From IMG/VR virus record IMGVR_UViG_3300028840_002431, positions 62,001-126,000 of that record: a stretch of 64,000 bases of DNA. The stretch is one strand, 5' to 3'. Shown piece by piece: positions 1,295 through 31,015 of the stretch. Numbering within the stretch: the stretch's first letter is position 1; each line of letters begins with the position of its first letter. A program made the translations under genes and the position numbers. The notes under the pieces are model-generated. The model was not told the origin of the DNA and did no database searches. It was given only the letters and a program-made list of their open reading frames with translations.

Positions 1295-1834
1295 TTATCC
1301 AGCCGCCAACATGTGCCGGGGCGTGCCTCCCAGATAGAAGGACCACTCCTCCGGACACATCTCGATCGGAATCGCTGGCATGGGAAGCGGTAGAGACTTG
1401 GGCCTGTACGGTTTCCTAAGCAACCTCATCTTGGCTTGCCTGGGAGTACGACCGGCCTTACGGGCATTACAGGCGTAGCACGCCGTGACAATGTTGATCC
1501 AGTTAGTCTTACCGCCCTGGTTCCTCGGGGTCACGTGATCGTAGTTCAACTCACGACGCGGAAGCCGATTCCCACAGTACTGGCAGGTGAAGTTGTCACG
1601 AGTCAGAACGTTGATCCGCGAGAACTTGACACCCTTCTTGTGGGTCGGGATTTTGGACGTAAGTCTAGCTACGGACGGAATCTGGTAGGTCACACTCGGA
1701 GACGACACGGTCTCGTCGTAAGACTCCAAGACCTCGATCTCTCCCATGTAGAGCCGACAGATAGCGTCCTGCCAAGGAACGATTCGGTGTGGTTGCATCC
1801 ACGGGGTCAGTAATAGTGTATGGAACTCAGACAT
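1295..1834 (-). CDS. HNH endonuclease (McrA/HNH_5-like)
   Basis: FSRINVLTRDNFTCQYCG, DHVTP..QGG..NWINIVTACYACN motifs. Confidence 0.9.
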   Translation of the reverse strand: MSEFHTLLLTPWMQPHRIVPWQDAICRLYMGEIEVLESYDETVSSPSVTYQIPSVARLTSKIPTHKKGVKFSRINVLTRDNFTCQYCGNRLPRRELNYDHVTPRNQGGKTNWINIVTACYACNARKAGRTPRQAKMRLLRKPYRPKSLPLPMPAIPIEMCPEEWSFYLGGTPRHMLAAG

Positions 1835-4221: not shown

Positions 4222-4347
4222 GAGAGCGTTCGAGACGAGAAGCAGGATGTTTGCGATGGGAATCGAACCCACTACTTTCTGTGTGTAAAACAGACGCTCT
4301 ACCCTAAATGAGCTACGCTTGTATGCTTTCTCCGATTGATCGCTCTC
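4222..4347 (-). ncRNA. tRNA-chimeric RNA copy 1: D, anticodon (TAC) and T arms with the conserved stem domain replacing the acceptor stem
   Basis: Terminal stem GAGAGCG/CGCTCTC, CAATC..GCATACAAGC, TAGCTCA..GGTAGAGC, GGTTCGATTCC, ..CTGC..TCTCG. Confidence 0.85.
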
Positions 4348-4486
4348 GGTGGCAGACGTTGGACTCGAACCAACAATTTTGCTTGTGAGCACAGAAGTAT
4401 TGTTCTCTCGCGAGAACGAGTGTTAGGTGCTGATTGCGTACAAACCTACGTTATGATCGTAAGCGGGCCACCCGGCCCAGTCTGCC
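4348..4486 (-). ncRNA. tRNA-chimeric RNA copy 2: tRNA body (loop ATCATAA) with conserved domain in the variable region
   Basis: Acceptor GGCAGAC/GTCTGCC, insert CAGCAC..ACTCG TTCTC GCGA GAGAA CAAT..GTGCT CACAAGC, T arm GTTGG TTCGAGT CCAAC. Confidence 0.85.
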
Positions 4487-4495
4487 TAAAATCTT

Positions 4496-4635
4496 CCCGC
4501 ACCCGAGTCATGAACCTGTTTGATTGCTCGTTTTCTAGACGAGTGCCTAACCACTAGGCTATTTCCAATAGTTTTGGTTTGGAAAACAGGATTCGAACCT
4601 GTGTATGCATGTAAGATTCACCTGTTGGGTACGGG
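4496..4635 (-). ncRNA. tRNA-chimeric RNA copy 3: circularly permuted tRNA (T, acceptor, D, anticodon AGA) closed by the conserved domain
   Basis: CCCGTACC CAAC..TCT TACATGC, T arm, TTTCCAA-ACCAAAACTA-TTGGAAA, D arm, CTCGT CTAGAAA ACGAG, CAGG..ACTCG GGTGCGGG. Confidence 0.85.
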
Positions 4636-4636
4636 T

Positions 4637-4777
4637 TGGAGGGGCTATCGGGAGTCGAACCCTAAAACGCTTGTGAGGACCAGAAATATGGCTCCTTGCA
4701 GAGCCGAGAATCGATCCTGGGTTTTTGGTTTTTCCTCTTCGATAGAAAGGTGACGGACCGTCCGTCTGTATAGCCCC
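4637..4777 (-). ncRNA. tRNA-chimeric RNA copy 4: tRNA body (anticodon ATC) with conserved domain in the variable region, CCA end
   Basis: Acceptor GGGGCTAT/ATAGCCCC-TCCA, insert CAGGATC..TCTCG GCTCT GCAA GGAGC CATA..GGTCCT CACAAGC. Confidence 0.85.
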
Positions 4778-4785
4778 TTATTAGT

Positions 4786-4886
4786 GGAGTGTACCCGAGT
4801 TCTAAACCTGTTGGTTACTGCGGTGGGCGGCTTCTTTGCCGCCCGGTTTAATCGTCGTGTAAGGTATAGGTATTGGGTACGTCCCC
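4786..4886 (-). ncRNA. conserved-domain RNA copy 5 (no tRNA body, GC hairpin instead)
   Basis: GTACC CAATA..ACCT TACACG..GGGCGGC/GCCGCCC hairpin..CAGGT..ACTCG GGTAC. Confidence 0.75.
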
Positions 4887-4911
4887 TAAGATACTGATCC
4901 AAACGGTGTTG

Positions 4912-5481
4912 TCAAGTAATAATTACACCGCCTGGGCTGATTTCATAACCGATTTTCTTGCCGTCCTTGAGGAACGCCTGAGCCGACCGGGCCAGAAGGG
5001 CAGAGACCACAGCGATGAAGGGCAGATGCTCACCGTCCTCGCAAGTGGCGGCCCCGGCTGCCCCGTCGTCGATGACGAAATTCTCGGTCCAGACCACCCG
5101 GCCGAAAGCTCCGTCGGCGGCCAGCGCTCCGTGGAGACACGGGATCTCGGCCTCCTTGGCGAAACCCTGGACCACGCGCCGAGACTCTGGGTTGTCCAGG
5201 CAGTCGATGACCAGATCGGCACCGCCCAGAAGCTCCTTCTCGTTGTCGGCCGTCAGTTTGTGCGGGACCATGTTGAGCTTGATCCCGAATAGGAACTGCA
5301 TTGCCTGGGCCAGGGACTGCGTCTTGTTCTTGCCGACGCCCGCCTTGCCATGGAACTGGCTCAACGTGTTCTTTTGCTCCACCCGGTCGAAATCGACGAC
5401 CTTCATGGTCGCCTCGTTCCGTAGGAACAGTATCAAATGTGAGCCTAGAGCACCGGCACCTATGATCGTGATGTTCTTCAT
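4912..5481 (-). CDS. ThiF/MoeB/E1-family adenylyltransferase
   Basis: IIGAGALGS, DFDRVEQKN, GKNK, DLVIDCLD. Candidate catalytic Cys in ATCED. Confidence 0.9.
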   Translation of the reverse strand: MKNITIIGAGALGSHLILFLRNEATMKVVDFDRVEQKNTLSQFHGKAGVGKNKTQSLAQAMQFLFGIKLNMVPHKLTADNEKELLGGADLVIDCLDNPESRRVVQGFAKEAEIPCLHGALAADGAFGRVVWTENFVIDDGAAGAATCEDGEHLPFIAVVSALLARSAQAFLKDGKKIGYEISPGGVIIT

Positions 5482-5511
5482 ACCCCTGTGTACGGTTGGC
5501 TGTTGAAAGAC

Positions 5512-5949
5512 CTAAGCATTTTCTTCTTGCCAGAGGGTTTTTAGCCGGTCCCGCTCCTTGGCTATGAAAGCAGCGATCTCTCTGGCATCACCCTGTTCAA
5601 AGCGACTAAGAGGCTCCCGTAGGAACTTGTAAAGGGCCTCTTCGTCTTCTTCTTCGGGCACCTTCTCTCGATCGAAGTCGTAATAGTAATAATGAGGGGC
5701 TTTGGTCAGAACCTGGGCCATCCAGTAGATCACGGCGTAGGCGTACGTCCGTTCACCGAAACTGATCCAGGACTTGTAGTCGAACCCGACGGGCCACTTC
5801 ACCTTCTCGGAATACGCCATGTCCGTGGTCAGCCAAAGCGCCGACGCCTCCGGAAGGGGAGTCATGTACTTGAAGTGTTGTTCCAGAAAGTCGAACATCC
5901 GCTTCTGGTCTTTTTGGCTCCTGGCAGCAACGTAGATTGAGTAGCCCAT
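5512..5949 (-). CDS. hypothetical protein
   Basis: Likely start ATG 5949 coupled to upstream stop. Confidence 0.65.
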   Translation of the reverse strand: MGYSIYVAARSQKDQKRMFDFLEQHFKYMTPLPEASALWLTTDMAYSEKVKWPVGFDYKSWISFGERTYAYAVIYWMAQVLTKAPHYYYYDFDREKVPEEEDEEALYKFLREPLSRFEQGDAREIAAFIAKERDRLKTLWQEENA

Positions 5950-6209
5950 TATGGTCCCGACACACCTGTTCCTTTCTTCTTGTCCCACTTACGAAACTCG
6001 TTCCAGGAGTCGAAGTGGCGTCTCGTCACACCCTTGAAATACTTCCACATATCACTCGCTTTGAACTTGAACGGGCCGCTGACAGCGGCAGCACAATAAC
6101 CACCGGAACAGGTGTATTCCCACTCGCCGGTCTCTTTATTCTCGACACTGCCGAATGTGTCGCCCCCGCAAACGGGACACGAAAACTCTGTCCTGTGTTG
6201 AGTGATCAT
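5949..6209 (-). CDS. small zinc-ribbon-like protein
   Basis: CPVCGG..CSGGYC, overlapping start/stop. Confidence 0.6.
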   Translation of the reverse strand: MITQHRTEFSCPVCGGDTFGSVENKETGEWEYTCSGGYCAAAVSGPFKFKASDMWKYFKGVTRRHFDSWNEFRKWDKKKGTGVSGP

Positions 6210-6409
6210 GGTCTCCGACGATACCCCAGCGACTCCTGGGTGTGTGGTGTTAGCTCCAGGGCGATCTCGAAACTGGTACTAGAATGGGAAGAAGCGACTA
6301 CAGCCACCTCAGGAGGGTTGGCCAGCTTCTTGGCTTGGTCGATGGCCTGAACAAGTTCGCGAACGGTTTGCTCCGTAATCTGAACAGTTGCGCCCTTCAG
6401 GGTAGTCAT
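6206..6409 (-). CDS. hypothetical protein
   Basis: ATGA overlaps at both ends. Confidence 0.5.
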   Translation of the reverse strand: MTTLKGATVQITEQTVRELVQAIDQAKKLANPPEVAVVASSHSSTSFEIALELTPHTQESLGYRRRP

Positions 6410-6792
6410 AGCTTCTGCCACTCCGGGAACGGTCTTTCTTCCGACCGGTCCCACCAACGGTAGCGGTAGCCCTGGAAGCCCCGAATCTTCTGGTCGATCG
6501 TGACAGCTACGGCGTCACCACCTCGAACCAGGGCAAAGCTGTCCTTGAAGTAGACGGGAACGTTCGTGTCGTAGCATACGGGGTCGTCGTCTATCCGTAT
6601 CAACGGCGAGTATCCGATAAGGTGGCCGCTGTAGACCACATAAACACGGTCGCCGGGTTGCAGCTTCTTCGGCGGGCTGCCCCCCATGAACCAACCCCAC
6701 TCCGTGCCGCTCCATTTGGCCCCGGCCGGGTCGCCCTCTGCAATCCAGCGCTTGAGTCCGAAAGACTTGGGCAACGTGACTACAATGTCCAT
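6406..6792 (-). CDS. possible EVE/ASCH (PUA-like) domain protein
   Basis: KLQPGDRVYVVYSGHLIGY resembles the EVE/ASCH core. Confidence 0.45.
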   Translation of the reverse strand: MDIVVTLPKSFGLKRWIAEGDPAGAKWSGTEWGWFMGGSPPKKLQPGDRVYVVYSGHLIGYSPLIRIDDDPVCYDTNVPVYFKDSFALVRGGDAVAVTIDQKIRGFQGYRYRWWDRSEERPFPEWQKL

Positions 6793-7028
6793 CAGGCCGT
6801 TCTTTCGCGTAAAAGCTCCACGACCGCTTCGGCCTGATCCGGCGACAGTCCCTCAGGCCACAGTTCATCAAGCCTGAGCCATTCCCGCAAGACGTTTTTC
6901 TCGTCCTTCGAGATAACTATCTTCGTTTCCTGGGAACCCTCTTCTCTTGTCAGGACGAGGTCGCCACTGGATTTTTCGATACGCGCCAAAAGCCGGTTCC
7001 CCGGCTCACCTATAACAAACGAGGCCAT
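6792..7028 (-). CDS. hypothetical protein
   Basis: ATG 7028 after GGAG RBS. Confidence 0.55.
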   Translation of the reverse strand: MASFVIGEPGNRLLARIEKSSGDLVLTREEGSQETKIVISKDEKNVLREWLRLDELWPEGLSPDQAEAVVELLRERTA

Positions 7029-7030
7029 CT

Positions 7031-7249
7031 TTACTCCTTCAGCCCTTCGAGCAACCAGCGAAGATCCCGTAGATCCGAGTCGTCTACCATTAGCTCGAAC
7101 ACCTCGTCGGGGTCCGGCAAGACCCCCGCGAAGCAAATCCTGTGTTCTATGGAAGGTTCCGGCAGATGCCCGACACACGCATTGTCGCTCAACCGCTTGA
7201 ACCGACAATCCGTGTGCGGACACCAACCAGGACGTTCCTGACCCGCCAT
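7031..7249 (-). CDS. small Cys/His-rich hypothetical protein
   Basis: WCPHTDC..C.GH..H..C, in operon. Confidence 0.55.
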   Translation of the reverse strand: MAGQERPGWCPHTDCRFKRLSDNACVGHLPEPSIEHRICFAGVLPDPDEVFELMVDDSDLRDLRWLLEGLKE

Positions 7250-7253
7250 CGGC

Positions 7254-7520
7254 TCAAACCCCGAAGGGCGTCTTCGGCCGAAGCTGAATCAGGTTGTAGG
7301 GACGTGCGTCGGTTGCGTTGAACCGATCCACGACGTAGTTACCCAGGTCGGGTGCCTGAGCCGGGATACCGGGAATGTCCCCGCCACGGATGGCTTCGGA
7401 GACCCACCCCTTCACGTCGTCGTCAGACGCAGCGAAGAGAACCGGGTCCGGAAGGTCCCCGTTCTGACCCCCGTAGGTGATGTTGACGCGAGCGTCGTTT
7501 TCGTTGATGTTGTCAGCCAT
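7254..7520 (-). CDS. ubiquitin-like (beta-grasp) protein
   Basis: 88 aa, strand-strand-helix pattern, C-terminal strand LIQLRP then KTPFG-V, adjacent to JAB and in operon with E1. Confidence 0.7.
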   Translation of the reverse strand: MADNINENDARVNITYGGQNGDLPDPVLFAASDDDVKGWVSEAIRGGDIPGIPAQAPDLGNYVVDRFNATDARPYNLIQLRPKTPFGV

Positions 7521-7917
7521 GCTGCACCTCTCTTTCTAGCTCGTACCTCGATTCCTTTCGAAGTCTTGGTAGCCATATCGGCTGGTAATATTTGTTGAGA
7601 TTGACGCGGTAGTCGTATTTGTCCGGGCCTTGCCAGACGATGTGAACGAGATGGGTGGAACTCGTGATCCACCAGATTATCCTCCGACCGAGAGCCGTCT
7701 CCACGCCGTTGAAGGTCGTAACGTCCTCGTAAGAGGGACCCGGCACCCCGGAGCCGGGGTGGCTGTGAGCAAATCCTAACACCCTGTCCCGGTTGTCCCA
7801 GATCACGTCCCAGAGCGTTCGGCTGTCTGGAAGGTAGGCCACGGACCGGTCCGTCGGGATATGCCAGAACAGTGGCTTTCCCTCACGATCGACTAGAACT
7901 CCAGCTTCCACAGTCAT
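7513..7917 (-). CDS. JAB/JAMM (MPN+) metallopeptidase
   Basis: N-terminal E (VEAG) and HSHP..PSYED JAMM motif. Confidence 0.85.
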   Translation of the reverse strand: MTVEAGVLVDREGKPLFWHIPTDRSVAYLPDSRTLWDVIWDNRDRVLGFAHSHPGSGVPGPSYEDVTTFNGVETALGRRIIWWITSSTHLVHIVWQGPDKYDYRVNLNKYYQPIWLPRLRKESRYELEREVQHG

Positions 7918-7926
7918 TTCAATACC

Positions 7927-8868
7927 TTAGACGTGCCTGTAAACCACGAGTTGTCCCGTTCGCTCCGCTTCCAGGATAACGGACGGTAGGCTCTCAAGGG
8001 TCAGTAGGTCGTCTCCCTTCTCTCCGGTGTCATGATCTGTTAAACACACCCCAGAATCGATAATCCTAAGAGTTTTCTTGTCGCACGTACATTCGAACCG
8101 CCGCCGCTTGAGCCGGTACTTAACGATCATCTCGTTCTTGCGGTGCCCGGCACGTTGATCCAGAAGCACAGCCCCGCCTACCGCTAAAGCGGCCTTTGCG
8201 GCCTCCTCGAAGTCCAGGAGAGCCATTTCCCGACGGCCAGCGCCGTCTCCCAGCTTCTCGACGATCTCGCGTCTACGGGCCTCCTTTTGACGCTCCTCTT
8301 CTTCCCGCTGGCGCTTTTCGGCAAGCTCCCGCCGACGCTTCTCTGCCTCCTTCCGTTGGAAGATCTCCATCCGGAAAGCGGCATCCAGGGCCGGGGAAAC
8401 ATCCTTGATGTCGGCCACGGAATCCTTGCCGTCCAGGTACGCCGTCAGAACGTCCATCTCCGGACCCAGCGGCATCTCTTGTTGCATGAAAAAGAGCGGG
8501 CCGTCCTCACACATACGCCCGGCAGAGACGTACACGAACCGGTCCAGAAACGGCTCGATCAGGTGGACGCGCTCCGCGTTGGCCACGATATCCGCGATCT
8601 TCGGCTCAACTCGAACGTCACGCGGGACCAGCCTGTCTCCGACCAAATAACCCATGACCTTACCCATGAGCAGATCAGTGTCAGAATCGTCGGCCTGTCG
8701 GAGAACACGCGCCCGCCGACCGTTCAGGGAGAAGACTACCCAACCGTGCTCATCCGGCAAACGGCCGTCGATGGTCCACTGTCGTGAACCCGACCGGAGA
8801 GACCTACCCCCGACCCATGGCGAAACCAGGGTTTCATCCTTAGTCTGTAGTAGGTCTCTCCAAGTCAT
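7927..8868 (-). CDS. coiled-coil protein with putative divergent E2 (UBC-like) C-terminal domain
   Basis: RIIDSGVCL followed by LTLESLPSVI resembles E2 GxICL plus following helix, and sits beside JAB and Ubl. Confidence 0.5.
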   Translation of the reverse strand: MTWRDLLQTKDETLVSPWVGGRSLRSGSRQWTIDGRLPDEHGWVVFSLNGRRARVLRQADDSDTDLLMGKVMGYLVGDRLVPRDVRVEPKIADIVANAERVHLIEPFLDRFVYVSAGRMCEDGPLFFMQQEMPLGPEMDVLTAYLDGKDSVADIKDVSPALDAAFRMEIFQRKEAEKRRRELAEKRQREEEERQKEARRREIVEKLGDGAGRREMALLDFEEAAKAALAVGGAVLLDQRAGHRKNEMIVKYRLKRRRFECTCDKKTLRIIDSGVCLTDHDTGEKGDDLLTLESLPSVILEAERTGQLVVYRHV

Positions 8869-8899
8869 GGTTCAACTATTACACCGGTTAGAGTTAGAA

Positions 8900-10783
8900 T
8901 CAAGCTGCCCAAGCGGGCTTGGTCAGCAACTCAGTGTTGAGGATGAGATCGACCAGCGATACTCTGGGAGCCGCCGCCTTTCTGGACGCCTTGCCCACCG
9001 GAGTAGCCGCGATCAGGTCTCTGATGGTGCGGGGAATCGCGTACGGGTCCGCGAAGATCCCCTCGTCGATCATGAAGCACGGGATACCGAGATTGGCCGC
9101 CGTGTCCTGGACCGCCGTGTAGCCGCGAGTGCCGCCTACCTTGAGGAACCCGAAAGCAACCGGGTTGAGGCCGGAAGACCTCACGGAATCGGAGAAGTCG
9201 TACGCCTCTTCGTCGCCCACGAAGATGAAGATCACGTCTTCATCGTCCTCAGGCTTGAAGGACTGGAGTACCCTGACGCCCGCTCCGTAATCGGTGCCGC
9301 CGCCCGCCCTGAAACCACGGAAAGCTTGCTCGACACCAGCCGACGAGTTCTGCTTGATCTTCACAACACGACCGGAGGTGTTGAACACCGACACGTGAGT
9401 CCGCTCCAGGGGGAACCCCTGTAGGAACTGGGTCAGGTACCGCTTAGCCGTCGGAATGGCCTTGTGCATGGAGGACGAAACGTCCACACAGAAGTAGATT
9501 CTCTGGCTATTGAGCACCTCTGCGACGGCCTTCTTGACAGCGTTGTCGGCCGCCTCCGACAGCTTCTCCTGGGTCTTCTTGGACTTGACACGCTGGGCGA
9601 TGTTGGCCGCCCGCATGTCTTCGGCCTCCTTGACCGCCGTCTCCCACCGAACCCGGATGTCCTGGACATCCAACAGTCCAAGCTCTTCCAGAGTCGGGGT
9701 CGCGATGATCAGGTCCTTGTTGGACAGGGACCCGACCTCGATGGCAGCCGCCATGACAGCCCTGGTCACACCGTCCTTGGGCAGAAGACCCACGACCCGC
9801 TTCCAGTTCGGCCGGTCCTGGGTGATCTTCTCGCAGATCTGCTCTTCGGTCAGACCCTCCCAGGATTCCGCCGCCTTGACCTCCTGGCCGATGGCGATGC
9901 TCCGGTGCCCCTCCTTGGACTGCGCTTGCTTCCAACGAAGGGTCTCGAAGAACTTGCCGGTGTTCGGCTTGTATCCGACCTTACGGGCCAGATCCATCAC
10001 CGTACGCCGGAAGCCCGCGTTGACCAGACCTTCCAGCATCTTGGGGTTCTCTTCCCGGTACCGTAGCCACTTCTCCACGGCCTTGGGCCAACGACCCAGG
10101 AACGGCTTACGAGCGGACTTACCGAAACCGAGATCCCGGTTGATCTTGGCGACGGCCGGTAGGCTCAGAACATCGTGGACCCTCATGAGCAACTTCGGGT
10201 TGAAGCTGACCTTGCCGTCCTTGCCCTTGGTGGTGATCAGGAACATGGCCTCGCCAACGTCACGGTAGTCCTCGTCGAGGAACGCGACCTTGCCCTTGTC
10301 CAGGACCGGATCACCCTTACGGGTTTGAACGAGCATGAAGGCTGCCAGGATGACCTTGAGGTCCCGGTGCTCCTGGCCGTATGCGTAGGAGGCCCACTTG
10401 GCCGCGAACTCGTTATCGAGATTCCAGACTTCCGCGACCTGCTTGTAGACCCACTCAACAACGTCCGGGTACAACCCGGCCGGTTGGTACTTGCCTACAA
10501 CCCGACGACCGTCCCGAACACGCCCGTCATTGCTGAGCTTGCCCAGCTTGACCTTGGTGCTCTTGCGGCCGACCTTACGCAATTCGTAAACGATCTTGTC
10601 GCCGTTCTCCTCTACGTGAGTGACCGGCAACCACTTAGAACCCACGACCGATCCGGTGTCGGTAACTGCGATACCAGCACGGTTGTGGACAGCATGGCCC
10701 GAGTGAGAGAGGACCGTCTGTAGGATTCTCTCAGCCGGTCCGAGATTCTCGTTTTGCATGTTATCCATCCGATCTGCCCGCAC
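8900..10783 (-). CDS. Ro60/TROVE-like protein: long basic helical region plus C-terminal vWA
   Basis: vWA motifs CVDVSSSM, GGGTDY, FIFVGDEE are clear. The TROVE assignment is inferred from architecture and segments KAVEKWL and DLARKVGYKP. Real start may be ATG 10768 or 10759. Confidence 0.65.
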   Translation of the reverse strand: MRADRMDNMQNENLGPAERILQTVLSHSGHAVHNRAGIAVTDTGSVVGSKWLPVTHVEENGDKIVYELRKVGRKSTKVKLGKLSNDGRVRDGRRVVGKYQPAGLYPDVVEWVYKQVAEVWNLDNEFAAKWASYAYGQEHRDLKVILAAFMLVQTRKGDPVLDKGKVAFLDEDYRDVGEAMFLITTKGKDGKVSFNPKLLMRVHDVLSLPAVAKINRDLGFGKSARKPFLGRWPKAVEKWLRYREENPKMLEGLVNAGFRRTVMDLARKVGYKPNTGKFFETLRWKQAQSKEGHRSIAIGQEVKAAESWEGLTEEQICEKITQDRPNWKRVVGLLPKDGVTRAVMAAAIEVGSLSNKDLIIATPTLEELGLLDVQDIRVRWETAVKEAEDMRAANIAQRVKSKKTQEKLSEAADNAVKKAVAEVLNSQRIYFCVDVSSSMHKAIPTAKRYLTQFLQGFPLERTHVSVFNTSGRVVKIKQNSSAGVEQAFRGFRAGGGTDYGAGVRVLQSFKPEDDEDVIFIFVGDEEAYDFSDSVRSSGLNPVAFGFLKVGGTRGYTAVQDTAANLGIPCFMIDEGIFADPYAIPRTIRDLIAATPVGKASRKAAAPRVSLVDLILNTELLTKPAWAA

Positions 10784-13197: not shown

Positions 13198-14394
13198 GTG
13201 GACTCACGCTGGAAAACCTCGTCCGCCCTCCCTACCGAGATAAGGGAGCACCCCTTACTTAAGGCCGCTTCTAACAAGACGGCCACGTGGTGGAGAGGCG
13301 AATCCTTCCCCGACCTTGGTACCCATTTCGACAAGGGGCCAGCCACGTGGGCGGGCCTTGGACTTCTACGAAAGGCCCTCGAAGGAGGGGAACCCGTCCG
13401 GCAAGCCACCTGGGAAGGGAACCTGATTGTCCCCCACAAGGACTTGATCGAAGCCACGAAGAAGATACTGAATGTTCGGCCTCTGTACCTCACGGACTTT
13501 GGCAATAACAACGGTGTCGTACTTCTGGGTTCCGAGGACACCTGGGTCAATATCCGGCAAAGCGAGAGGGGCCAGACAGCGGATGTCCAAATCGTTACAT
13601 CCAGCCTTGAAGACGCCCTCAAGTCCGAAAAGCTCTTCAACGCTTGCATCCAGCCGGACGACCCCCGGAAGGGGTTAGTGTTTGCGCTGACCAAGTGCAT
13701 GACCGGGTACAGCCTTACCCGACTCGGTACTGCGGGCACACCGTTAGAAAGGGGTAACTACACGGACGCGGTCCTTGCTGACTATGACCACGTCGTCGCG
13801 GACCTCAAGACTCCAGGCCCGTGTGGAAGGCTGATTATATTTTCAGGATCTCCCGGCACCGGAAAGACTTTCCTGGTCCGCGCCCTTCTGACAGAGGTTC
13901 CCAACGCCGCCTTCGTCCTCATTCCTCCTCAGATGGTGAGCGACCTTGGTGCTCCGGAACTGTTGCCCGCTCTCCTCAACGCCAAGAACGAGATCAACGG
14001 CCCCATCATTCTCATCCTCGAAGACGGAGACAAGGCTCTCGTCAAGCGTAAGGATGGGGACATGAACACCATCTCGTCCCTTCTGAACCTGGGGGACGGT
14101 ATCCTGGGGTCCATCATGGACATCCGGATTCTCGCCACCACGAACGCCGAGACCCTGGAGATGGACCCGGCCACCCGCCGTAAGGGGAGGCTTTGCCGTC
14201 ACATACAAATCGATGCGTTGCCAGCCGAACAAGGCTCACAGATTGTCCAACGGCTCACCAACAATCCTTACACATTCAAGGGCGATACGGTCCTTGCCGA
14301 CGTGTACAGCGCCGCCCGTGAAAAGGGTTGGAAGCCAGCGGAAGTTGTGCCGCCCCGGCCAGAGGCGCGTCCCGAAATAATCGGTGTGTTATAG
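13198..14394 (+). CDS. AAA+ ATPase
   Basis: Walker A GSPGTGKT, Walker B LILEDGD, LLNLGDG, ATTN, DPA..RKGR. Confidence 0.9.
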   Translation: MDSRWKTSSALPTEIREHPLLKAASNKTATWWRGESFPDLGTHFDKGPATWAGLGLLRKALEGGEPVRQATWEGNLIVPHKDLIEATKKILNVRPLYLTDFGNNNGVVLLGSEDTWVNIRQSERGQTADVQIVTSSLEDALKSEKLFNACIQPDDPRKGLVFALTKCMTGYSLTRLGTAGTPLERGNYTDAVLADYDHVVADLKTPGPCGRLIIFSGSPGTGKTFLVRALLTEVPNAAFVLIPPQMVSDLGAPELLPALLNAKNEINGPIILILEDGDKALVKRKDGDMNTISSLLNLGDGILGSIMDIRILATTNAETLEMDPATRRKGRLCRHIQIDALPAEQGSQIVQRLTNNPYTFKGDTVLADVYSAAREKGWKPAEVVPPRPEARPEIIGVL

Positions 14395-25909: not shown

Positions 25910-26025
25910 GGGTATAATTGATTGGCCTTGAAACGCACAATCTGGCCTGATCGGGACCAGCACGGGTGCCCTGTGCATCTTCACCCTACCCGGCACCGAA
26001 TAGGGTACGTGTTCCAGGGCCAATC

Positions 26026-26405
26026 GGTGGAGTCGGCGGGAATCGAACCCGCGTCCGAAAGTGCTACTAATTACCACCTCTACGTGTGTAGCTCCATTTC
26101 GTGTCTTTGACAGGAACACCACCGGAGCGGGCAAAACCTGGGGGCGGCCTCACGGCTGCCACTTCCACCACTGGTCTAAACAACCTTGATTGAGGACGAC
26201 CAGAGACTGCGCCTCAACTGCACCGGCTAATCGTCGCCCCATCCAAAGACGCCGGATTCTCTGGCGGGACGCCCTAGGCCGCGATGGCCAGGGGTGCTGC
26301 GTTATCGTTCGCAGTTATGTTTGAGCGGCTTGATAACCCGGCCAGCCGATCAACCGGGACACGCAGTAGTAAATTCCACACCTCCGTCGAAACCTTTACG
26401 ACCCC
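26026..26405 (-). ncRNA. ssrA: tmRNA, one-piece, tag ANDNAAPLAIAA (26274..26312)
   Basis: 5' GGGGTCGTAAAGGTTTCGAC, 3' GGACGCGGGTTCGATTCCCGCCGACTCCACC, G3-U70, resume context ATAACT GCG. Confidence 0.96.
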
Positions 26406-29334: not shown

Positions 29335-29338
29335 ATAG

Positions 29339-29482
29339 CCCCCGCTCCCGGAGTTGAACCGGATTTGCATGTAAGAACCGCTGGATGCCTCCCGTGAAGG
29401 AGGCGAGTGAACAATCCTGAAGAGCATTTTTGCTCCAGCTTTAGCAGTGCTGGCGGGGGAACCACACCCCCAGTAAGCGGGG
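29339..29482 (-). ncRNA. tRNA-chimeric RNA copy 6: Ser(GCT)-like body with conserved domain in the variable region
   Basis: CCCCGCTT/GAGCGGGG, CAGGATTG..ACTCG CCTCC TTCACG GGAGG CATCC..CGGTTCT TACATGC. Confidence 0.82.
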
Positions 29483-29489
29483 AAAGAGA

Positions 29490-29685
29490 AGGCAGACGAC
29501 GAGTCAATGAACCCGTAGGCGGGCATCTTCATCGGGACCCCAGGAACCACACTCCGGTCTAAGACCGGCACAGGCACTCTGTGTTTCCTCTCGGGAACTC
29601 GCCCCGCACAGTGCCGTACGAGGCACGCATCCTGAGGGGATGAGATGAAACAGGACCCGAAAACGGGCATCTTCGTCGTTTGCCC
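29490..29685 (-). ncRNA. multi-branched structured RNA of unknown family
   Basis: Terminal stem GGGCAAACGACGA/TCGTCGTCTGCCT, two GAAGATGCCCG-N4-CGGGT modules, nested stems. Confidence 0.65.
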
Positions 29686-29689
29686 TCTC

Positions 29690-29824
29690 TGGCGGGGCTT
29701 TGGGGAGTCGAACCCCAAAGAACGTGTAGACGTAACAAGGTTGCGTCCCTTTGTGTCAGATGCCTCTGACAGAGATGCGAGTATCGTGCGTCGAACAGTT
29801 TGGCGGCCTCCCGCCAAAAGCCCC
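29690..29824 (-). ncRNA. tRNA-chimeric RNA copy 7: conserved domain replaces the anticodon arm
   Basis: GGGGCTT/AAGCCCC-GCCA, GACG..ACTCG..CAACC..CGTC TACACG, T arm TGGGG TTCGACT CCCCA. Confidence 0.75.
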
Positions 29825-29831
29825 TAAGTCA

Positions 29832-29980
29832 GTCCGCGTTCGAGTCGATCGACCTGTTTAGCGTTTGCTTGTTCCGTAGACAAGTGCCTGTACCAATTCG
29901 GCTATATTCCCGATGTGGAAATAGTGGGACTCGAACCCACATAACGTATGCATGTAAGATCGTTCTGGATGAACGCGGAT
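29832..29980 (-). ncRNA. tRNA-chimeric RNA copy 8: circularly permuted tRNA (T, acceptor, D, anticodon ACG)
   Basis: TCCGCGTT CATCC..GATCT TACATGC, T arm, TATTTCC-ACATC-GGGAATA, D arm, CTTGT CTACGGA ACAAG, CAGGTCG..ACTCG AACGCGGA. Confidence 0.87.
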
Positions 29981-30136
29981 TGGTCGGGACCCTAGGATTC
30001 GAACCTAGATTGCTTGTAAGCGCCGTGGAGGTGTTTCCTACTTTTAGGGAGCTATCCCATATAAGAAACGAGTTACAGTGCTGGTCAGTATTGCTTCTGA
30101 TTTACGTTCAGAATGGATGCCATCTCCATGGTCCCG
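29981..30136 (-). ncRNA. tRNA-chimeric RNA copy 9: tRNA body (loop ACGTAAA) with conserved domain in the variable region, CCA
   Basis: CGGGACC/GGTCCCG-ACCA, CAGCAC..ACTCG TTTC..GAAA CACC..GCGCT TACAAGC. Confidence 0.82.
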
Positions 30137-30232
30137 ATATGCCGATCCTGTTAGGTGCCCGAAGACCCCGACCGTTTCAACGGTATGCACCGTCGAACGT
30201 TGTTGTCCGGGACCGGCGTCGGACGACAACGT

Positions 30233-30770: not shown

Positions 30771-30841
30771 GGCGGGCCAGTAGGGAATCGAACCCCATCC
30801 TCCGGATTTGGAATCCGGTTGGCTTCCATAGCCCCTGACCC
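30771..30841 (-). tRNA. tRNA-Trp(CCA)
   Basis: Loop TTCCAAA, G73. Confidence 0.86.
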
Positions 30842-30845
30842 GTAA

Positions 30846-30970
30846 GAACGTTCGAGTTGCTTGAGCAGATTGGTTAGCAAAATGGGATTCGAACCCATGC
30901 CTTTCCGGTTGATAGCCAGATGTCCTTCCACTGGACGATTCGCTTGTATGCTCTGACAGATTGAACGCCC
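30846..30970 (-). ncRNA. tRNA-chimeric RNA copy 10: D, anticodon (ATC) and T arms, conserved domain replaces the acceptor stem
   Basis: GGGCGTT CAATC..GAGCA TACAAGC, tRNA arms, CTGCTC..ACTCG AACGTTC. Confidence 0.87.
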
Positions 30971-30971
30971 T

Positions 30972-31015
30972 TGGCGGTAAGCGAAGGAATCGAACCTTCA
31001 TTGACCATCCTTACC
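30972..31015 (-). ncRNA. tRNA minihelix-like element (acceptor and T arm only)
   Basis: GGTAAG..GAAGG TTCGATT CCTTC G CTTACC G CCA. Confidence 0.55.

What the first reader, a model, noticed from the sequence alone, without database searches (positions are those of the whole stretch)
4222..10783. Phage operon linking a Ro60/TROVE-like protein, a ubiquitin-like conjugation set (E2-like, JAB, Ubl, E1) and the RNA array
Seen: a co-oriented, tightly packed run of vWA protein (627 aa), 313-aa protein with IDSGVCL, JAMM peptidase, 88-aa protein ending PFG-V, six small ORFs and a ThiF/E1. The first RNA copy starts about 25 nt after the E1 stop. Established: E1+E2+JAB+Ubl gene sets form bacterial ubiquitination-like systems (for example the Bil defence operons), JAB trims Ubl to expose a C-terminal Gly, and Ro60 genes usually lie beside their Y RNAs. 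Inference: an RNA-guided or RNA-baited Ubl-tagging machine, in which a Ro60-like RNP captures tRNA-binding host proteins and marks them with the Ubl. I do not know of a described phage system with this combination.
Basis: partly seen in the sequence, partly recalled or inferred. Interest (0 to 1): 0.92.

Follow-up and report, generated by a model that had tools for sequence, protein, structure and literature searches.

The report
Huge-phage Ro60-like, Ubl and RNA cassette
A 416-kb phage carries a widely conserved, never-annotated cassette that joins a Ro60-like RNA-binding ring protein and an array of tRNA-mimicking RNAs to a stripped-down ubiquitin-like activation kit, a combination I could not find described anywhere and that hints at protein tagging coupled to an RNA-protein particle.

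Summary
On the minus strand lie a 627-aa protein, a 313-aa protein, a JAMM peptidase, an 88-aa protein ending PFG-V, lineage-specific small ORFs, a 189-aa ThiF-type E1, and then five structured RNAs that start 22 nt after the E1 stop.

- **627-aa protein:** its predicted structure matches only Ro60/TROVE structures over about 550 columns, and it has an intact MIDAS motif.
- **JAMM peptidase:** the active-site motif is invariant.
- **88-aa protein:** it behaves like a ubiquitin-like precursor, with an invariant RPKTPFG end followed by 0-61 variable residues. The three cassettes that lack the peptidase all end exactly at the Gly.
- **313-aa "E2":** this call is not supported. A confident model finds no UBC fold or any other known fold. 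Only one invariant Cys (GxCL) speaks for a carrier role.
- **Conservation:** the five genes keep their order in 50 of 56 loci.
- **RNAs:** three classes of tRNA-like RNA follow the E1 almost everywhere. One class has YrlA-like permuted architecture with very strong covariation. They also follow the E1 in a MAG contig with cellular flanking genes and no tRNA genes.

The best reading is a Ro/Y-like RNP coupled to a minimal Ubl activation and conjugation pathway, target unknown. The bait-and-tag model is untested. I found no published description.

The parts
8900..10783 (-). Ro60-like protein (627 aa). It has an N-terminal beta domain (about residues 37-100), a helical TROVE-like region (about 106-423) and a C-terminal vWA domain with a MIDAS motif (D434xS436xS438, T497, D524).
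   Evidence: Pfam VWA_2 at 1.3e-7. The MIDAS residues are invariant in 24 homologues. The AF2 model has pLDDT 76. The top Foldseek PDB hits are all Ro60/TROVE: 9kop at 7.7e-9, 1yvp at 3.7e-7 and Thermus phage phiLo Ro60 9l5y at 5.4e-7, each aligned over about 550 columns. There is no sequence-level TROVE hit.
7927..8868 (-). p313, a conserved protein of unknown fold. It has an N-terminal beta-rich domain (1-145), a long charged helix (159-207) and a C-terminal alpha + 4-strand + alpha domain (220-313) with a single invariant Cys275 in GxCL. It is a candidate Ubl carrier, but it is not a demonstrable E2.
   Evidence: Alignments are. The AF2 model has pLDDT 86.5. It has no structural or profile relatives. 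There are 435 clusters at 50% identity, and all 150 listed share the same ~300-aa architecture. The gene lies directly after the Ro-like gene in most loci.
7513..7917 (-). JAMM/MPN+ metallopeptidase (134 aa), with E4, H51xH53, S62 and D65.
   Evidence: Pfam Prok-JAB at 2.6e-4, below the cut-off. The motif is invariant in 51 orthologues. The gene overlaps the Ubl gene by 8 nt.
7254..7520 (-). Ubl-like precursor (88 aa) with an invariant C-terminal RPKTPFG, followed in the window by one extra residue (Val).
   Evidence: C-termini across loci are. Tail lengths after the Gly are 0 aa in 9 loci, 1 aa in 22, 2-14 aa in 18 and 32-61 aa in 5. The three JAB-less cassettes end exactly at the Gly. The fold was not tested, and there is no profile hit.
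5512..7226 (-). Five lineage-specific small ORFs (144, 128, 83, 86 and 158 aa) inserted between the Ubl and E1 genes. They are not part of the conserved system.
   Evidence: They are absent from all loci except the window's own phage and, in part, L006. They have no family hits apart from a weak Zn-ribbon hit for the 86-aa ORF.
4912..5481 (-). Mini E1: a ThiF/MoeB-type adenylation domain of only 189 aa. It has G8xGxxG13, the D30-N38 motif, D93-C-L-D-N97 and a conserved Cys147 (TCE).
   Evidence: Pfam ThiF at 2.5e-22. MoeB 1jw9 at 6e-7. PADLOC CBASS E1-E2 models at 1.7e-12, matching the E1 part only.
4888..4915 (-). Sigma-70-like promoter match (TTGACA-16-TATCTT) overlapping the ThiF stop. It may be a promoter dedicated to the RNA array.
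   Evidence: This is the best of 4 matches, but the total number of matches is not above the shuffled expectation, so the evidence is weak.
4781..4889 (-). RNA unit U1. It has a long stalk that shares sequence with U3, but a simple hairpin in place of the tRNA-like head.
   Evidence: Fold. Repeats D2 and D4 are shared with U3.
4640..4778 (-). RNA unit U2, a tRNA-like RNA of normal topology. It has a covarying acceptor stem, an atypical D arm, an anticodon-like arm with a non-conserved loop, an extra arm of about 45 nt, a canonical T arm and a 3' tail U-CCA.
   Evidence: Model R3 finds 87 copies at E<1e-6 in 58 sources. The 3' tail consensus is N-C-Y-R.
4496..4635 (-). RNA unit U3, a permuted tRNA-like RNA with YrlA-like architecture. 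A two-helix stalk encloses a T arm, a 7-bp hairpin, a D arm and an anticodon-like arm.
   Evidence: There are 45 full-length homologues. 92.8% of cells are paired, against 33-45% in the slid controls, and 37 of 39 pairs show compensatory changes.
4351..4486 (-). RNA unit U4, a divergent tRNA-like RNA. It has a 7-bp acceptor stem, an anticodon-like loop UCAUAAC, an insert of about 65 nt, a T arm and a 3' A-CC.
   Evidence: Fold. A weak Rfam YrlA match (21.8 bits, E 0.11) spans its T arm and the D arm of U5. It is not conserved in relatives by blastn.
4222..4347 (-). RNA unit U5, a complete cloverleaf core set on a long two-helix stalk.
   Evidence: Rfam tRNA positions 5-66 at 47.5 bits. Model R1 gives full-length hits of at least 59 bits in 38 of 51 sources, mostly 240-620 nt after ThiF.

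Best explanation
The cassette encodes a Ro60/Y-RNA-type ribonucleoprotein that is functionally coupled to a minimal ubiquitin-like (Ubl) activation and conjugation pathway.

**Shown**
- A TROVE+vWA (MIDAS) fold protein.
- An intact JAMM peptidase.
- A small protein with an invariant C-terminal Gly behind a variable tail.
- A ThiF adenylation domain.
- A fifth conserved protein (p313) with one invariant Cys.
- An adjacent array of structured tRNA-like RNAs, one class of which has the architecture of bacterial Y RNA (YrlA).
- All of these are inherited together.

**Inferred**
1. The RNAs are cut from the array like tRNAs and load onto the Ro-like ring, as Y RNAs do.
2. The JAMM peptidase removes the tail of the Ubl precursor to expose Gly87.
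3. The mini-E1 adenylates that Gly.
4. The activated Ubl passes to a thiol. Candidates are E1 Cys147 and/or Cys275 of p313, whose gene is glued to the Ro-like gene and which probably binds that protein, perhaps through the vWA MIDAS site.
5. The Ubl ends on a lysine of a protein selected by, or belonging to, the RNP.

The cassette lies inside the phage's block of about 44 tRNA genes, and bacterial Ro60/Y RNPs act in RNA quality control and repair. The likely field of action is therefore tRNA/RNA surveillance during infection. The target is unknown.
For: - **Gene order:** the five genes keep their order in 50 of 56 loci at 37-100% identity. The families are large.
- **Ro-like protein:** Ro60/TROVE structures are the only full-length structural matches, at E 1e-7 to 1e-9. 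vWA-only hits are at 1e-4 or worse. The MIDAS residues are invariant.
- **Enzymes:** the JAMM and ThiF motifs are invariant. ThiF is above the Pfam cut-off.
- **Ubl tails:** they vary from 0 to 61 aa after an invariant FG. The three JAB-less cassettes encode the mature end, 3 of 3 against a base rate of 9 in 54.
- **p313:** Cys275 is the only invariant Cys across 27 diverse orthologues.
- **RNAs:** they are conserved with covariation and follow ThiF in most loci.
- **RNAs track the Ro-like gene:** in rearranged loci (L044, L046, L053, L054, L056) the stalked tRNA-like RNAs sit next to the Ro-like gene instead of next to ThiF.
- **Cellular context:** in L061 a compact cassette is flanked by acyl-CoA dehydrogenase and TonB-receptor genes, with no tRNA genes in the locus. 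Two U3-type RNAs and a YrlA-core match (E 0.0088) still directly follow ThiF.
Against: - No E2 (UBC) fold or any known fold was found for p313, despite a confident model.
- The beta-grasp fold of the 88-aa protein was not tested, and no profile links it to known Ubls.
- The TROVE assignment rests on a predicted structure (pLDDT 76, pTM 0.48) with TM-scores of only 0.36-0.46. There is no sequence-level signal.
- No RNA unit reaches the Rfam YrlA gathering score.
- The E1 is truncated to 189 aa and lacks the usual C-terminal region.
- Nothing shows that the two modules act on each other rather than merely in the same process.
- There are no experimental data, and no cultured phage carries the cassette.
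Confidence: 0.45

Rival explanations
1. Sulfur-relay reading. The Ubl is a sulfur carrier of the Urm1 / SAMP / TtuB kind. The mini-E1 adenylates it, it becomes a thiocarboxylate, and it donates sulfur for thiolation of the phage's tRNAs or tRNA-like RNAs. p313 (invariant Cys) would act in sulfur transfer, and the Ro-like RNP would serve as platform or substrate. The JAMM peptidase matures the carrier.
For: Ubl + E1 + JAMM with no recognisable E2 is the composition of the archaeal SAMP/UbaA/HvJAMM1, Thermus TtuB/TtuC and Urm1/Uba4 systems, which serve tRNA thiolation (established knowledge; papers listed). No E2 fold was found. The cassette sits among tRNA genes and next to RNAs with canonical T arms. 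YrlA RNAs are known to carry tRNA-type modifications (PMC4201824).
Against: The conserved end is Phe-Gly, not the Gly-Gly of known sulfur carriers. No PP-loop thiolase, rhodanese or cysteine desulfurase is in the cassette, and p313 matches none of them. The E1 has no rhodanese domain. This reading does not explain the tight linkage to a vWA/MIDAS protein.
Confidence: 0.15
2. Bait-and-tag reading. The tRNA-like RNAs on the Ro-like ring act as decoys that capture host tRNA-binding proteins such as anticodon nucleases. p313, working as an E2, tags these with the Ubl to neutralise them.
For: The anticodon-like loops of U2-type RNAs are not conserved between phages, while the stems covary, as expected of mimics rather than decoders. 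The arrays hold many diversified copies, up to six or more U2-type units per locus. The system is carried mainly by huge phages that invest heavily in tRNAs. Cys275 of p313 is invariant.
Against: There is no evidence for any captured protein. p313 is not demonstrably an E2. The same cassette with its RNAs also occurs in what looks like a bacterial chromosome. That fits a housekeeping or defence role at least as well as a phage counter-defence.
Confidence: 0.1
3. Self-regulation, or a non-protein acceptor. The Ubl modifies the RNP's own proteins (the Ro-like protein or p313) as a switch, or it is transferred from the adenylate to a non-protein acceptor. One candidate is the 3' end of the acceptor-stem-bearing tRNA-like RNAs. 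Another is a lipid, as with Atg8, whose mature end is also aromatic-Gly.
For: U2-type RNAs have tRNA-like 7-bp acceptor stems and encoded N-C-Y-R (often CCA) tails. An acyl-adenylate is the same chemistry that aminoacyl-tRNA synthetases use (established knowledge). The FG end plus a short removable tail resembles Atg8-type Ubls (own knowledge; analogy only). No E2 or E3 is recognisable.
Against: This is entirely inferential. The encoded tail is CCA in only about half of the copies. No precedent exists for Ubl-RNA esters in bacteria or phages in the literature searched.
Confidence: 0.1
4. No functional link. The Ro-like/p313 pair, the JAB/Ubl/E1 trio and the RNAs are independent modules that happen to travel together in the variable tRNA region of these phages.
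For: Insertions of unrelated ORFs and HNH genes occur between p313 and JAB and between Ubl and ThiF, so the cassette is divisible into three blocks. tRNA regions of large phages accumulate accessory genes.
Against: The order is kept in 50 of 56 loci down to 37% identity. In compact versions the five genes abut or overlap (L061, L007, L021, L023). The whole set with its RNAs recurs outside a tRNA region in L061.
Confidence: 0.1

Closest known systems
Bacterial Ro60 (Rsr) with YrlA/YrlB Y RNAs, for example the Salmonella rsr-yrlBA-rtcBA operon and Deinococcus Rsr/Yrn1/PNPase. Phage Ro60 is also known, such as Thermus phage phiLo (PDB 9L5Y).
   Same: It shares the TROVE-like helical region plus a vWA domain with a MIDAS motif. 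Non-coding RNAs encoded close by combine a long stalk with a tRNA-like head in the order T arm, hairpin, D arm. Phage-encoded Ro60 and nearby YrlA-like RNAs are already on record (PMC4201824, PMC7824862, PMC12135203).
   Different: There is no sequence-level TROVE match, and the protein has an extra N-terminal beta domain. The RNAs do not reach the YrlA gathering score. They form arrays of three structural classes, with up to six or more copies of one class in a locus. The partner genes here are a Ubl, JAMM, E1 and p313, not RtcB/RtcA or PNPase.
Bacterial ubiquitination-like operons: Bil (BilA-D), Bub, and CBASS Cap2/Cap3.
   Same: A JAMM peptidase, a small protein with a C-terminal Gly and a ThiF-type E1 are encoded together. 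The peptidase is expected to expose or recycle the Gly. The E1 matches the E1 half of the PADLOC Cap2 models.
   Different: The E1 is a bare 189-aa adenylation domain. There is no detectable E2. PADLOC recognises none of the other four proteins. The cassette is mostly phage-encoded rather than an anti-phage island. It is coupled to a Ro-like protein and structured RNAs.
E2-independent Ubl systems tied to tRNA thiolation: archaeal SAMP/UbaA/HvJAMM1, Thermus TtuB/TtuC, and eukaryotic Urm1/Uba4.
   Same: The composition is Ubl + E1 + JAMM with no E2, and there is a connection to tRNA biology.
   Different: The end is Phe-Gly rather than Gly-Gly. No thiolase or rhodanese is linked. Two extra conserved proteins are present, the Ro-like protein and p313.

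Membership tests
Ro60 / TROVE family | Sequence match to the TROVE domain profile (Pfam PF05731) or to solved Ro60 sequences | tested here: not met
   No TROVE hit in Pfam for the window protein or for any of 24 homologues, even at E up to 10. phmmer and profile searches of PDB sequences find only vWA proteins.
Ro60 / TROVE family | TROVE helical-repeat region followed by a vWA domain (overall Ro60 fold) | tested here: met
   AF2 model with pLDDT 76. Foldseek ranks 1-7 are all Ro60/TROVE entries at E 7.7e-9 to 2.5e-6 over about 550 columns. TM-scores are only 0.29-0.46, so ring closure itself is not verified.
Ro60 / TROVE family | MIDAS motif in the vWA domain | tested here: met
   D434, S436, S438, T497 and D524 are invariant in 24 homologues.
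Ro60 / TROVE family | Binds Y RNA and misfolded RNA | not testable with these tools
   The evidence is genomic linkage only. Stalked tRNA-like RNAs accompany the gene in 38 of 51 sources.
YrlA (Rfam RF02553) | Covariance-model score at or above the gathering score (69 bits) | tested here: not met
   The best scores are 21.8 bits (E 0.11) in the window and 27.4 bits (E 0.0088, core only) in L061. No hits at gathering in the window or in 8 further loci.
YrlA (Rfam RF02553) | Architecture: a long stalk formed by the 5' and 3' ends, enclosing a T arm, an acceptor-like hairpin and a D arm | tested here: met
   U3-type RNA in 45 sequences, with 92.8% of cells paired against at most 45% in slid controls, and 37 of 39 pairs with compensatory changes. 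It carries one extra anticodon-like arm.
YrlA (Rfam RF02553) | Encoded next to a Ro60 gene | tested here: met
   The RNAs lie within the same cassette, after ThiF. In rearranged loci they lie directly upstream of the Ro-like gene.
E2 / UBC-fold Ubl-conjugating enzymes (claimed for p313) | UBC fold | tested here: not met
   The model has pLDDT 86.5. No E2 is among the listed Foldseek matches in PDB or BFVD, and the best E-values are 0.35 and 0.18. The weak top hits include RNase III dsRBDs. The C-terminal domain has helix + 4 strands + Cys loop + helix, which is compatible with a minimal E2-like topology but is not diagnostic.
E2 / UBC-fold Ubl-conjugating enzymes (claimed for p313) | Profile match to UQ_con or Prok-E2 families, or to Cap2/Bil E2 models | tested here: not met
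   No hits in Pfam (full length and 27 C-terminal domains at E up to 10), NCBIfam, PHROGs, PADLOC or PDB profiles.
E2 / UBC-fold Ubl-conjugating enzymes (claimed for p313) | Invariant catalytic cysteine | tested here: met
   Cys275 (GxCL) is the only Cys invariant in 27 diverse orthologues. C260 is about 90% conserved, and C262 and H279 vary, so this is not a zinc site. There is no HPN motif upstream.
JAMM / MPN+ peptidases | E...HxH...S..D metal-binding motif | tested here: met
   E4, H51, H53, S62 and D65 are conserved in at least 90% of 51 orthologues.
JAMM / MPN+ peptidases | Pfam Prok-JAB at or above the gathering score | tested here: inconclusive
   21.3 bits against a cut-off of 25, E 2.6e-4.
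Ubiquitin-like (beta-grasp) modifiers | Beta-grasp fold | not tested
There are no profile hits to known Ubls in Pfam or PDB. hhalign against a Multi_ubiq protein from L001 gave probability 0.1.
Ubiquitin-like (beta-grasp) modifiers | C-terminal Gly that is encoded terminally or exposed by processing, with E1 and peptidase genes alongside | tested here: met
   G87 is invariant. The tails are 0-61 aa. JAB-less cassettes end at the Gly.
E1 / ThiF-MoeB adenylyltransferases | ThiF domain above the Pfam cut-off, with the nucleotide-binding GxGxxG and DxxDN motifs | tested here: met
   79.6 bits against a cut-off of 28.1. G8-G13 and D93-N97 are conserved.
E1 / ThiF-MoeB adenylyltransferases | Full-length enzyme with a C-terminal Ubl-binding/zinc region and a catalytic Cys | tested here: inconclusive
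   The protein is only 189 aa, against about 250 aa for MoeB/ThiF. The alignment to MoeB ends near residue 208 of 249. One conserved Cys147 could be catalytic. All NCBIfam equivalog scores are far below their cut-offs.
Bil / Bub / CBASS Cap2-Cap3 systems | Recognition of the component proteins by PADLOC defence-system models | tested here: not met
   Only the ThiF protein matches, and only the E1 half of the E1-E2 models. The other four proteins have no match at E up to 1.

The most novel reading that the evidence does not exclude
The Ro-like ring loaded with diversified tRNA-mimic RNAs is the substrate-selecting part of a ubiquitin-like tagging machine. p313, a carrier of novel fold docked on the Ro-like protein, would transfer the E1-activated Ubl onto whatever the RNA bait holds, for example host tRNA-targeting nucleases. 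Alternatively the Ubl would go onto the 3' end of the acceptor-stem-bearing RNAs themselves. Either way this would be an RNA-directed protein (or RNA) tagging system with no described counterpart.
Probability: 0.12. Interest if true: 0.95.

Novelty: new variant of a known kind. Interest (0 to 1): 0.78.

Why it matters
Ro60/Y-RNA particles and ubiquitin-like conjugation are both eukaryote-like systems whose prokaryotic roles are only now being worked out. They have not been connected in prokaryotes. In animals the only link I know of is the long-debated association of Ro60 with the E3 ligase Ro52/TRIM21 (own knowledge).

Here the two are inherited as one unit in more than a thousand metagenomic contigs of huge phages, and in at least one apparently cellular genome. 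With them come a conserved protein of unknown fold and arrays of three kinds of tRNA mimic.

If the modules really act together, three things follow:
- A new way of choosing Ubl targets, through an RNA-protein particle.
- A function for the many tRNA-like RNAs of huge phages.
- A tractable five-gene system for studying what bacterial-type Ro60 does.

Even on the conservative reading, it adds a large unannotated family of Ro60-like proteins, a minimal 189-aa E1, and well-supported new structured RNA families.

Tried and rejected
- **Sequence searches for TROVE:** Pfam on 24 members, PDB phmmer and PDB profile searches found only the vWA domain.
- **E2 test of p313:** Foldseek against PDB and BFVD, PDB profile searches with the full protein and with the C-terminal domain, Pfam on 27 C-terminal domains, and PADLOC were all negative.
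- **Exhaustive profile search with the p313 C-terminal domain:** it returned only same-architecture relatives among the 150 listed, so it built no bridge to E2 families. The 126 weaker hits could not be seen.
- **Chance hits dismissed:** weak PDB profile hits of p313 to a toxin B-subunit (E at least 0.12) and of its C-terminal domain to proteinaceous RNase P (E 0.26).
- **Zinc-site idea for p313 (ECxC...C..H):** rejected, because only one Cys is invariant once diverse orthologues are included.
- **Ubl fold:** no profile support, and a comparison with a neighbouring Multi_ubiq protein was negative.
- **Rfam YrlA at the gathering threshold:** no hit in the window or in 8 further loci.
- **Exact stalk motif of U1/U3:** found only in the closest relatives.
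- **Near-identical DNA in GenBank phages:** none.
- **Neighbouring window ORFs:** no informative domains beyond an HNH and an AAA ATPase.
- **Promoter/terminator scan:** not enriched over shuffles.
- **Literature:** four searches found no paper linking TROVE/Ro60 with Ubl, JAB or ThiF genes.

Full report
**What is there**

The window is a piece of IMG/VR contig IMGVR_UViG_3300028840_002431, 416.5 kb long. It is a huge phage with 42 tRNA genes called by ARAGORN and a tmRNA in these 64 kb, all on the minus strand.

The finding's genes are on the same strand:
- 627 aa at 8900-10783.
- 313 aa at 7927-8868.
- 134 aa at 7513-7917.
- 88 aa at 7254-7520.
- Five small ORFs at 5512-7226.
- 189 aa at 4912-5481.

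The gaps are 31 nt and 9 nt, and the 134-aa and 88-aa genes overlap by 8 nt. A 690-nt non-coding stretch follows. Its first structured unit starts 22 nt after the ThiF stop.

**The proteins**

*The 627-aa protein.* It has a C-terminal vWA domain (Pfam VWA_2, 1.3e-7) with invariant MIDAS residues D434, S436, S438, T497 and D524. No sequence method sees a TROVE domain. An AlphaFold model (pLDDT 76) shows an N-terminal beta domain, a long helical region and the vWA domain. Its seven best PDB matches are all Ro60/TROVE structures, including the Ro60 of Thermus phage phiLo. They have E-values of 7.7e-9 to 2.5e-6 over about 550 columns. vWA-only proteins start at 8e-5. TM-scores are modest (0.29-0.46) and pTM is 0.48. 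I therefore accept "Ro60-like fold" but cannot certify a closed ring.

*The 134-aa protein.* It is a JAMM peptidase. The Pfam hit is below cut-off, but E4, H51xH53, S62 and D65 are conserved in 51 orthologues.

*The 189-aa protein.* It is a ThiF/MoeB adenylation domain (79.6 bits). It also matches the E1 half of the CBASS Cap2 models. It is about 60 residues shorter than MoeB and keeps one conserved Cys (C147).

Its C-terminus is nevertheless telling:
- RPKTPFG is conserved throughout, and the Gly is invariant.
- The ORF ends at that Gly in 9 loci, one residue later in 22, 2-14 residues later in 18, and 32-61 residues later in 5.
- The three cassettes that lack the JAMM gene (L057, L059, L060) all end exactly at the Gly.

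This is the behaviour of a Ubl precursor trimmed by its neighbouring peptidase.

- The model is confident (pLDDT 86.5).
- Foldseek finds nothing with E below 0.35 in the PDB or below 0.18 in BFVD. No E2 appears among the listed matches, and the faint top hits include RNase III dsRBDs.
- Profiles of the whole protein and of its C-terminal domain hit nothing in PDB, Pfam or PADLOC.
- An exhaustive profile search of 1.84 billion representatives found 435 clusters, and all 150 listed have the same ~300-aa architecture.

What remains in favour of a carrier role:
- The only Cys invariant in 27 diverse orthologues is C275, in GxCL.
- That Cys sits in a loop after a helix and four strands and before a helix.
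- The gene is directly downstream of the Ro-like gene in most loci.

I therefore describe p313 as a conserved Cys-bearing protein of unknown fold and a candidate Ubl carrier. It is not an E2.

**Conservation**

A degenerate-pattern scan of IMG/VR with the p313 alignment returned 54 loci. Together with two loci from exact-protein look-ups, 50 of 56 loci carry all five genes in the same order at 37-100% identity.

Insertions occur between the Ro-like gene and p313, between p313 and JAB, and between Ubl and ThiF. The cassette is therefore built of three blocks: Ro-like + p313, JAB + Ubl, and ThiF + RNAs. The window's small ORFs are such insertions.

Both large proteins have more than 1,200 homologues, on contigs of up to 660 kb.

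In GenBank phages the only relative is the metagenomic "Virus Rctr197k". There every gene of the cassette is annotated "hypothetical", except a "ThiF-like protein".

In one genome per GTDB species there are just six hits, all in MAGs (Polyangia/Myxococcota, Gemmatimonadota). Most look like phage fragments with tRNA genes. L061 is different:
- It comes from a 155-kb contig with 69% GC.
- It holds a compact cassette.
- Its flanks are acyl-CoA dehydrogenase, TonB-dependent receptor, Kelch and CBM9 genes.
- ARAGORN finds no tRNA gene in the locus.

**The RNAs**

The 690-nt stretch folds into five units, each closed by its own stem (z = -5.0).

- **U2 (4640-4778)** is a tRNA-like RNA of normal topology. 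It has a long extra arm and an encoded CCA.
- **U3 (4496-4635)** is permuted. A two-helix stalk encloses a T arm, a 7-bp hairpin, a D arm and an anticodon-like arm. This is the YrlA architecture with one additional arm.
- **U5 (4222-4347)** is a full cloverleaf on a stalk. Rfam's tRNA model matches only positions 5-66.
- **U1** shares U3's stalk but has a plain hairpin head.
- **U4** is a divergent U2-like unit.

U2, U3 and U5 are conserved with compensatory changes in L001, L006, L013 and L016. Covariance models built from them gave the following:
- U5-type: full-length matches of at least 59 bits in 38 of 51 sources. Ordinary tRNAs match only the central part of the model and score lower.
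- U3-type: 45 copies. 92.8% of cells are paired against 33-45% for slid controls, 37 of 39 pairs show compensatory changes, and 0 of 500 shuffles reach the observed values.
- U2-type: 87 copies with freely covarying acceptor stems, non-conserved "anticodon" loops and N-C-Y-R tails.

These units lie head-to-tail, mostly within 1.3 kb after ThiF. In rearranged loci (L044, L046, L053, L054, L056) the stalked RNAs lie next to the Ro-like gene instead. In L061 two U3-type RNAs and a YrlA-core match (E 0.0088) follow ThiF, even though the locus has no tRNA gene.

No unit reaches Rfam's YrlA gathering score. These RNAs are therefore Y-RNA-like in design and genomic position, but they are not members of RF02553.

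**How it most likely works**

*Shown:* the parts listed above and their co-inheritance.

*Inferred:*
1. The RNAs load onto the Ro-like protein, as Y RNAs do.
2. The JAMM peptidase exposes Gly87.
3. The mini-E1 adenylates it.
4. The Ubl moves to a thiol, either E1 C147 or p313 C275.
5. The Ubl then moves to a target chosen by, or part of, the RNP.

I put this general "RNP-coupled Ubl pathway" at about 0.45. The rivals are as follows:
- A Urm1/SAMP/TtuB-like sulfur relay for RNA thiolation (about 0.15). It fits the absence of an E2 and the tRNA setting. It does not fit the Phe-Gly end or the absence of a thiolase.
- Self-modification, or transfer to RNA or lipid (about 0.1).
- Mere co-location (about 0.1). 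Synteny down to 37% identity and the L061 context argue against this.

**Comparison with what is known**

Three things are already known:
- Phage-encoded Ro60, and YrlA-like RNAs near it (PMC4201824, PMC12135203).
- A TROVE protein in some jumbo phages (PMC7824862).
- E1/JAB/Ubl operons in bacteria (Bil, Bub, CBASS; own knowledge and PMC10097602).

None of the four literature searches found a paper that links a TROVE/Ro60 protein with Ubl, JAB or ThiF genes. The two papers that looked closest do not describe this link.

I therefore rate it a new variant of known kinds. The new elements are the novel-fold component (p313), the new RNA families, and an untested possibility of RNA-directed tagging.

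**Caveats**
- Every functional statement beyond domain identity is inference.
- Two of the five protein assignments rest on context rather than on fold or profile evidence: the Ubl fold and the carrier role of p313.
- The TROVE call depends on a predicted structure.
- The "cellular" context of L061 comes from a MAG and could be a binning or assembly artefact.

Noticed in passing
window 29336-30141 and 30840-30976 (minus strand): There is a second set of the same RNA classes inside the main tRNA block, 19-26 kb from the cassette. It comprises U2-type at 29981-30141 (51.7 bits) and 29336-29484 (37.3 bits), U3-type at 29829-29983 (90.5 bits), and U5-type at 30840-30976 (76.4 bits). ARAGORN calls the last one tRNA-Asp(atc).
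   Followed up: partly
L061 6072-10560 (MAG contig JAVJQW010000021.1): A compact five-gene cassette plus two U3-type RNAs lies in a 69% GC contig. Its flanks are acyl-CoA dehydrogenase, TonB-dependent receptor, Kelch-repeat and CBM9 genes, and the locus has no tRNA genes. The system may also exist in bacterial chromosomes (Myxococcota-like).
   Followed up: partly
L057, L059, L060 (Polyangia/Polyangiaceae MAG contigs): These cassette variants lack the JAMM gene, and their Ubl ORF stops exactly after the conserved Gly. L059 carries at least eight tRNA-like RNA units, four U3-type and four U5-type, after ThiF.
   Followed up: yes
L036, L043, L045, L048 (Ubl genes): These Ubl homologues have 30-60-residue C-terminal extensions containing CxxC motifs. 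They may be Ubl-zinc-ribbon fusion precursors that would need the peptidase for release.
   Followed up: no
window 4222-4890 and homologous arrays: A short motif, YACAAGC, recurs just 5' of the T arm in U2-type units and just 5' of the D arm in U5-type units. CUCGAAYG is invariant in the 3' strand of the U5 stalk. This partly resembles the GNCGAA(N)G element reported for YrlA. These may be protein-recognition elements.
   Followed up: no
window 4888-4915 (minus strand): The best sigma-70-like promoter match of the region (TTGACA-16-TATCTT, 10 of 12) overlaps the ThiF stop codon. It would start transcription at the first RNA unit. The number of matches in the region is not above the shuffled expectation.
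   Followed up: no
L002 7140-9314: In this more distant relative, an RNA ligase gene (PF09414) and an Rv2179c-like 3'-5' exoribonuclease gene lie directly upstream of the Ro-like gene. This fits an RNA repair or quality-control setting.
   Followed up: no
L001 7870-8082; L016 916-1119: A 70-aa protein with the Pfam Multi_ubiq domain (PF14452) is encoded about 2 kb upstream of the cassette in L001, with a weak homologue in L016. It is absent from the window and is not detectably related to the cassette's Ubl.
   Followed up: yes
window 26025-26405 (minus strand) and the whole window: The phage encodes its own tmRNA (tag ANDNAAPLAIAA). ARAGORN tRNA genes on the minus strand, including duplicates and odd anticodons such as Asp(atc).
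   Followed up: no
window 13198-14394 (plus strand); 1295-1834 (minus strand): The 398-aa plus-strand ORF carries an AAA ATPase domain. It is the lone plus-strand ORF with a domain hit upstream of the cassette. The 179-aa minus-strand ORF is an HNH endonuclease downstream of it. HNH genes also interrupt the cassette in other loci such as L002.
   Followed up: no
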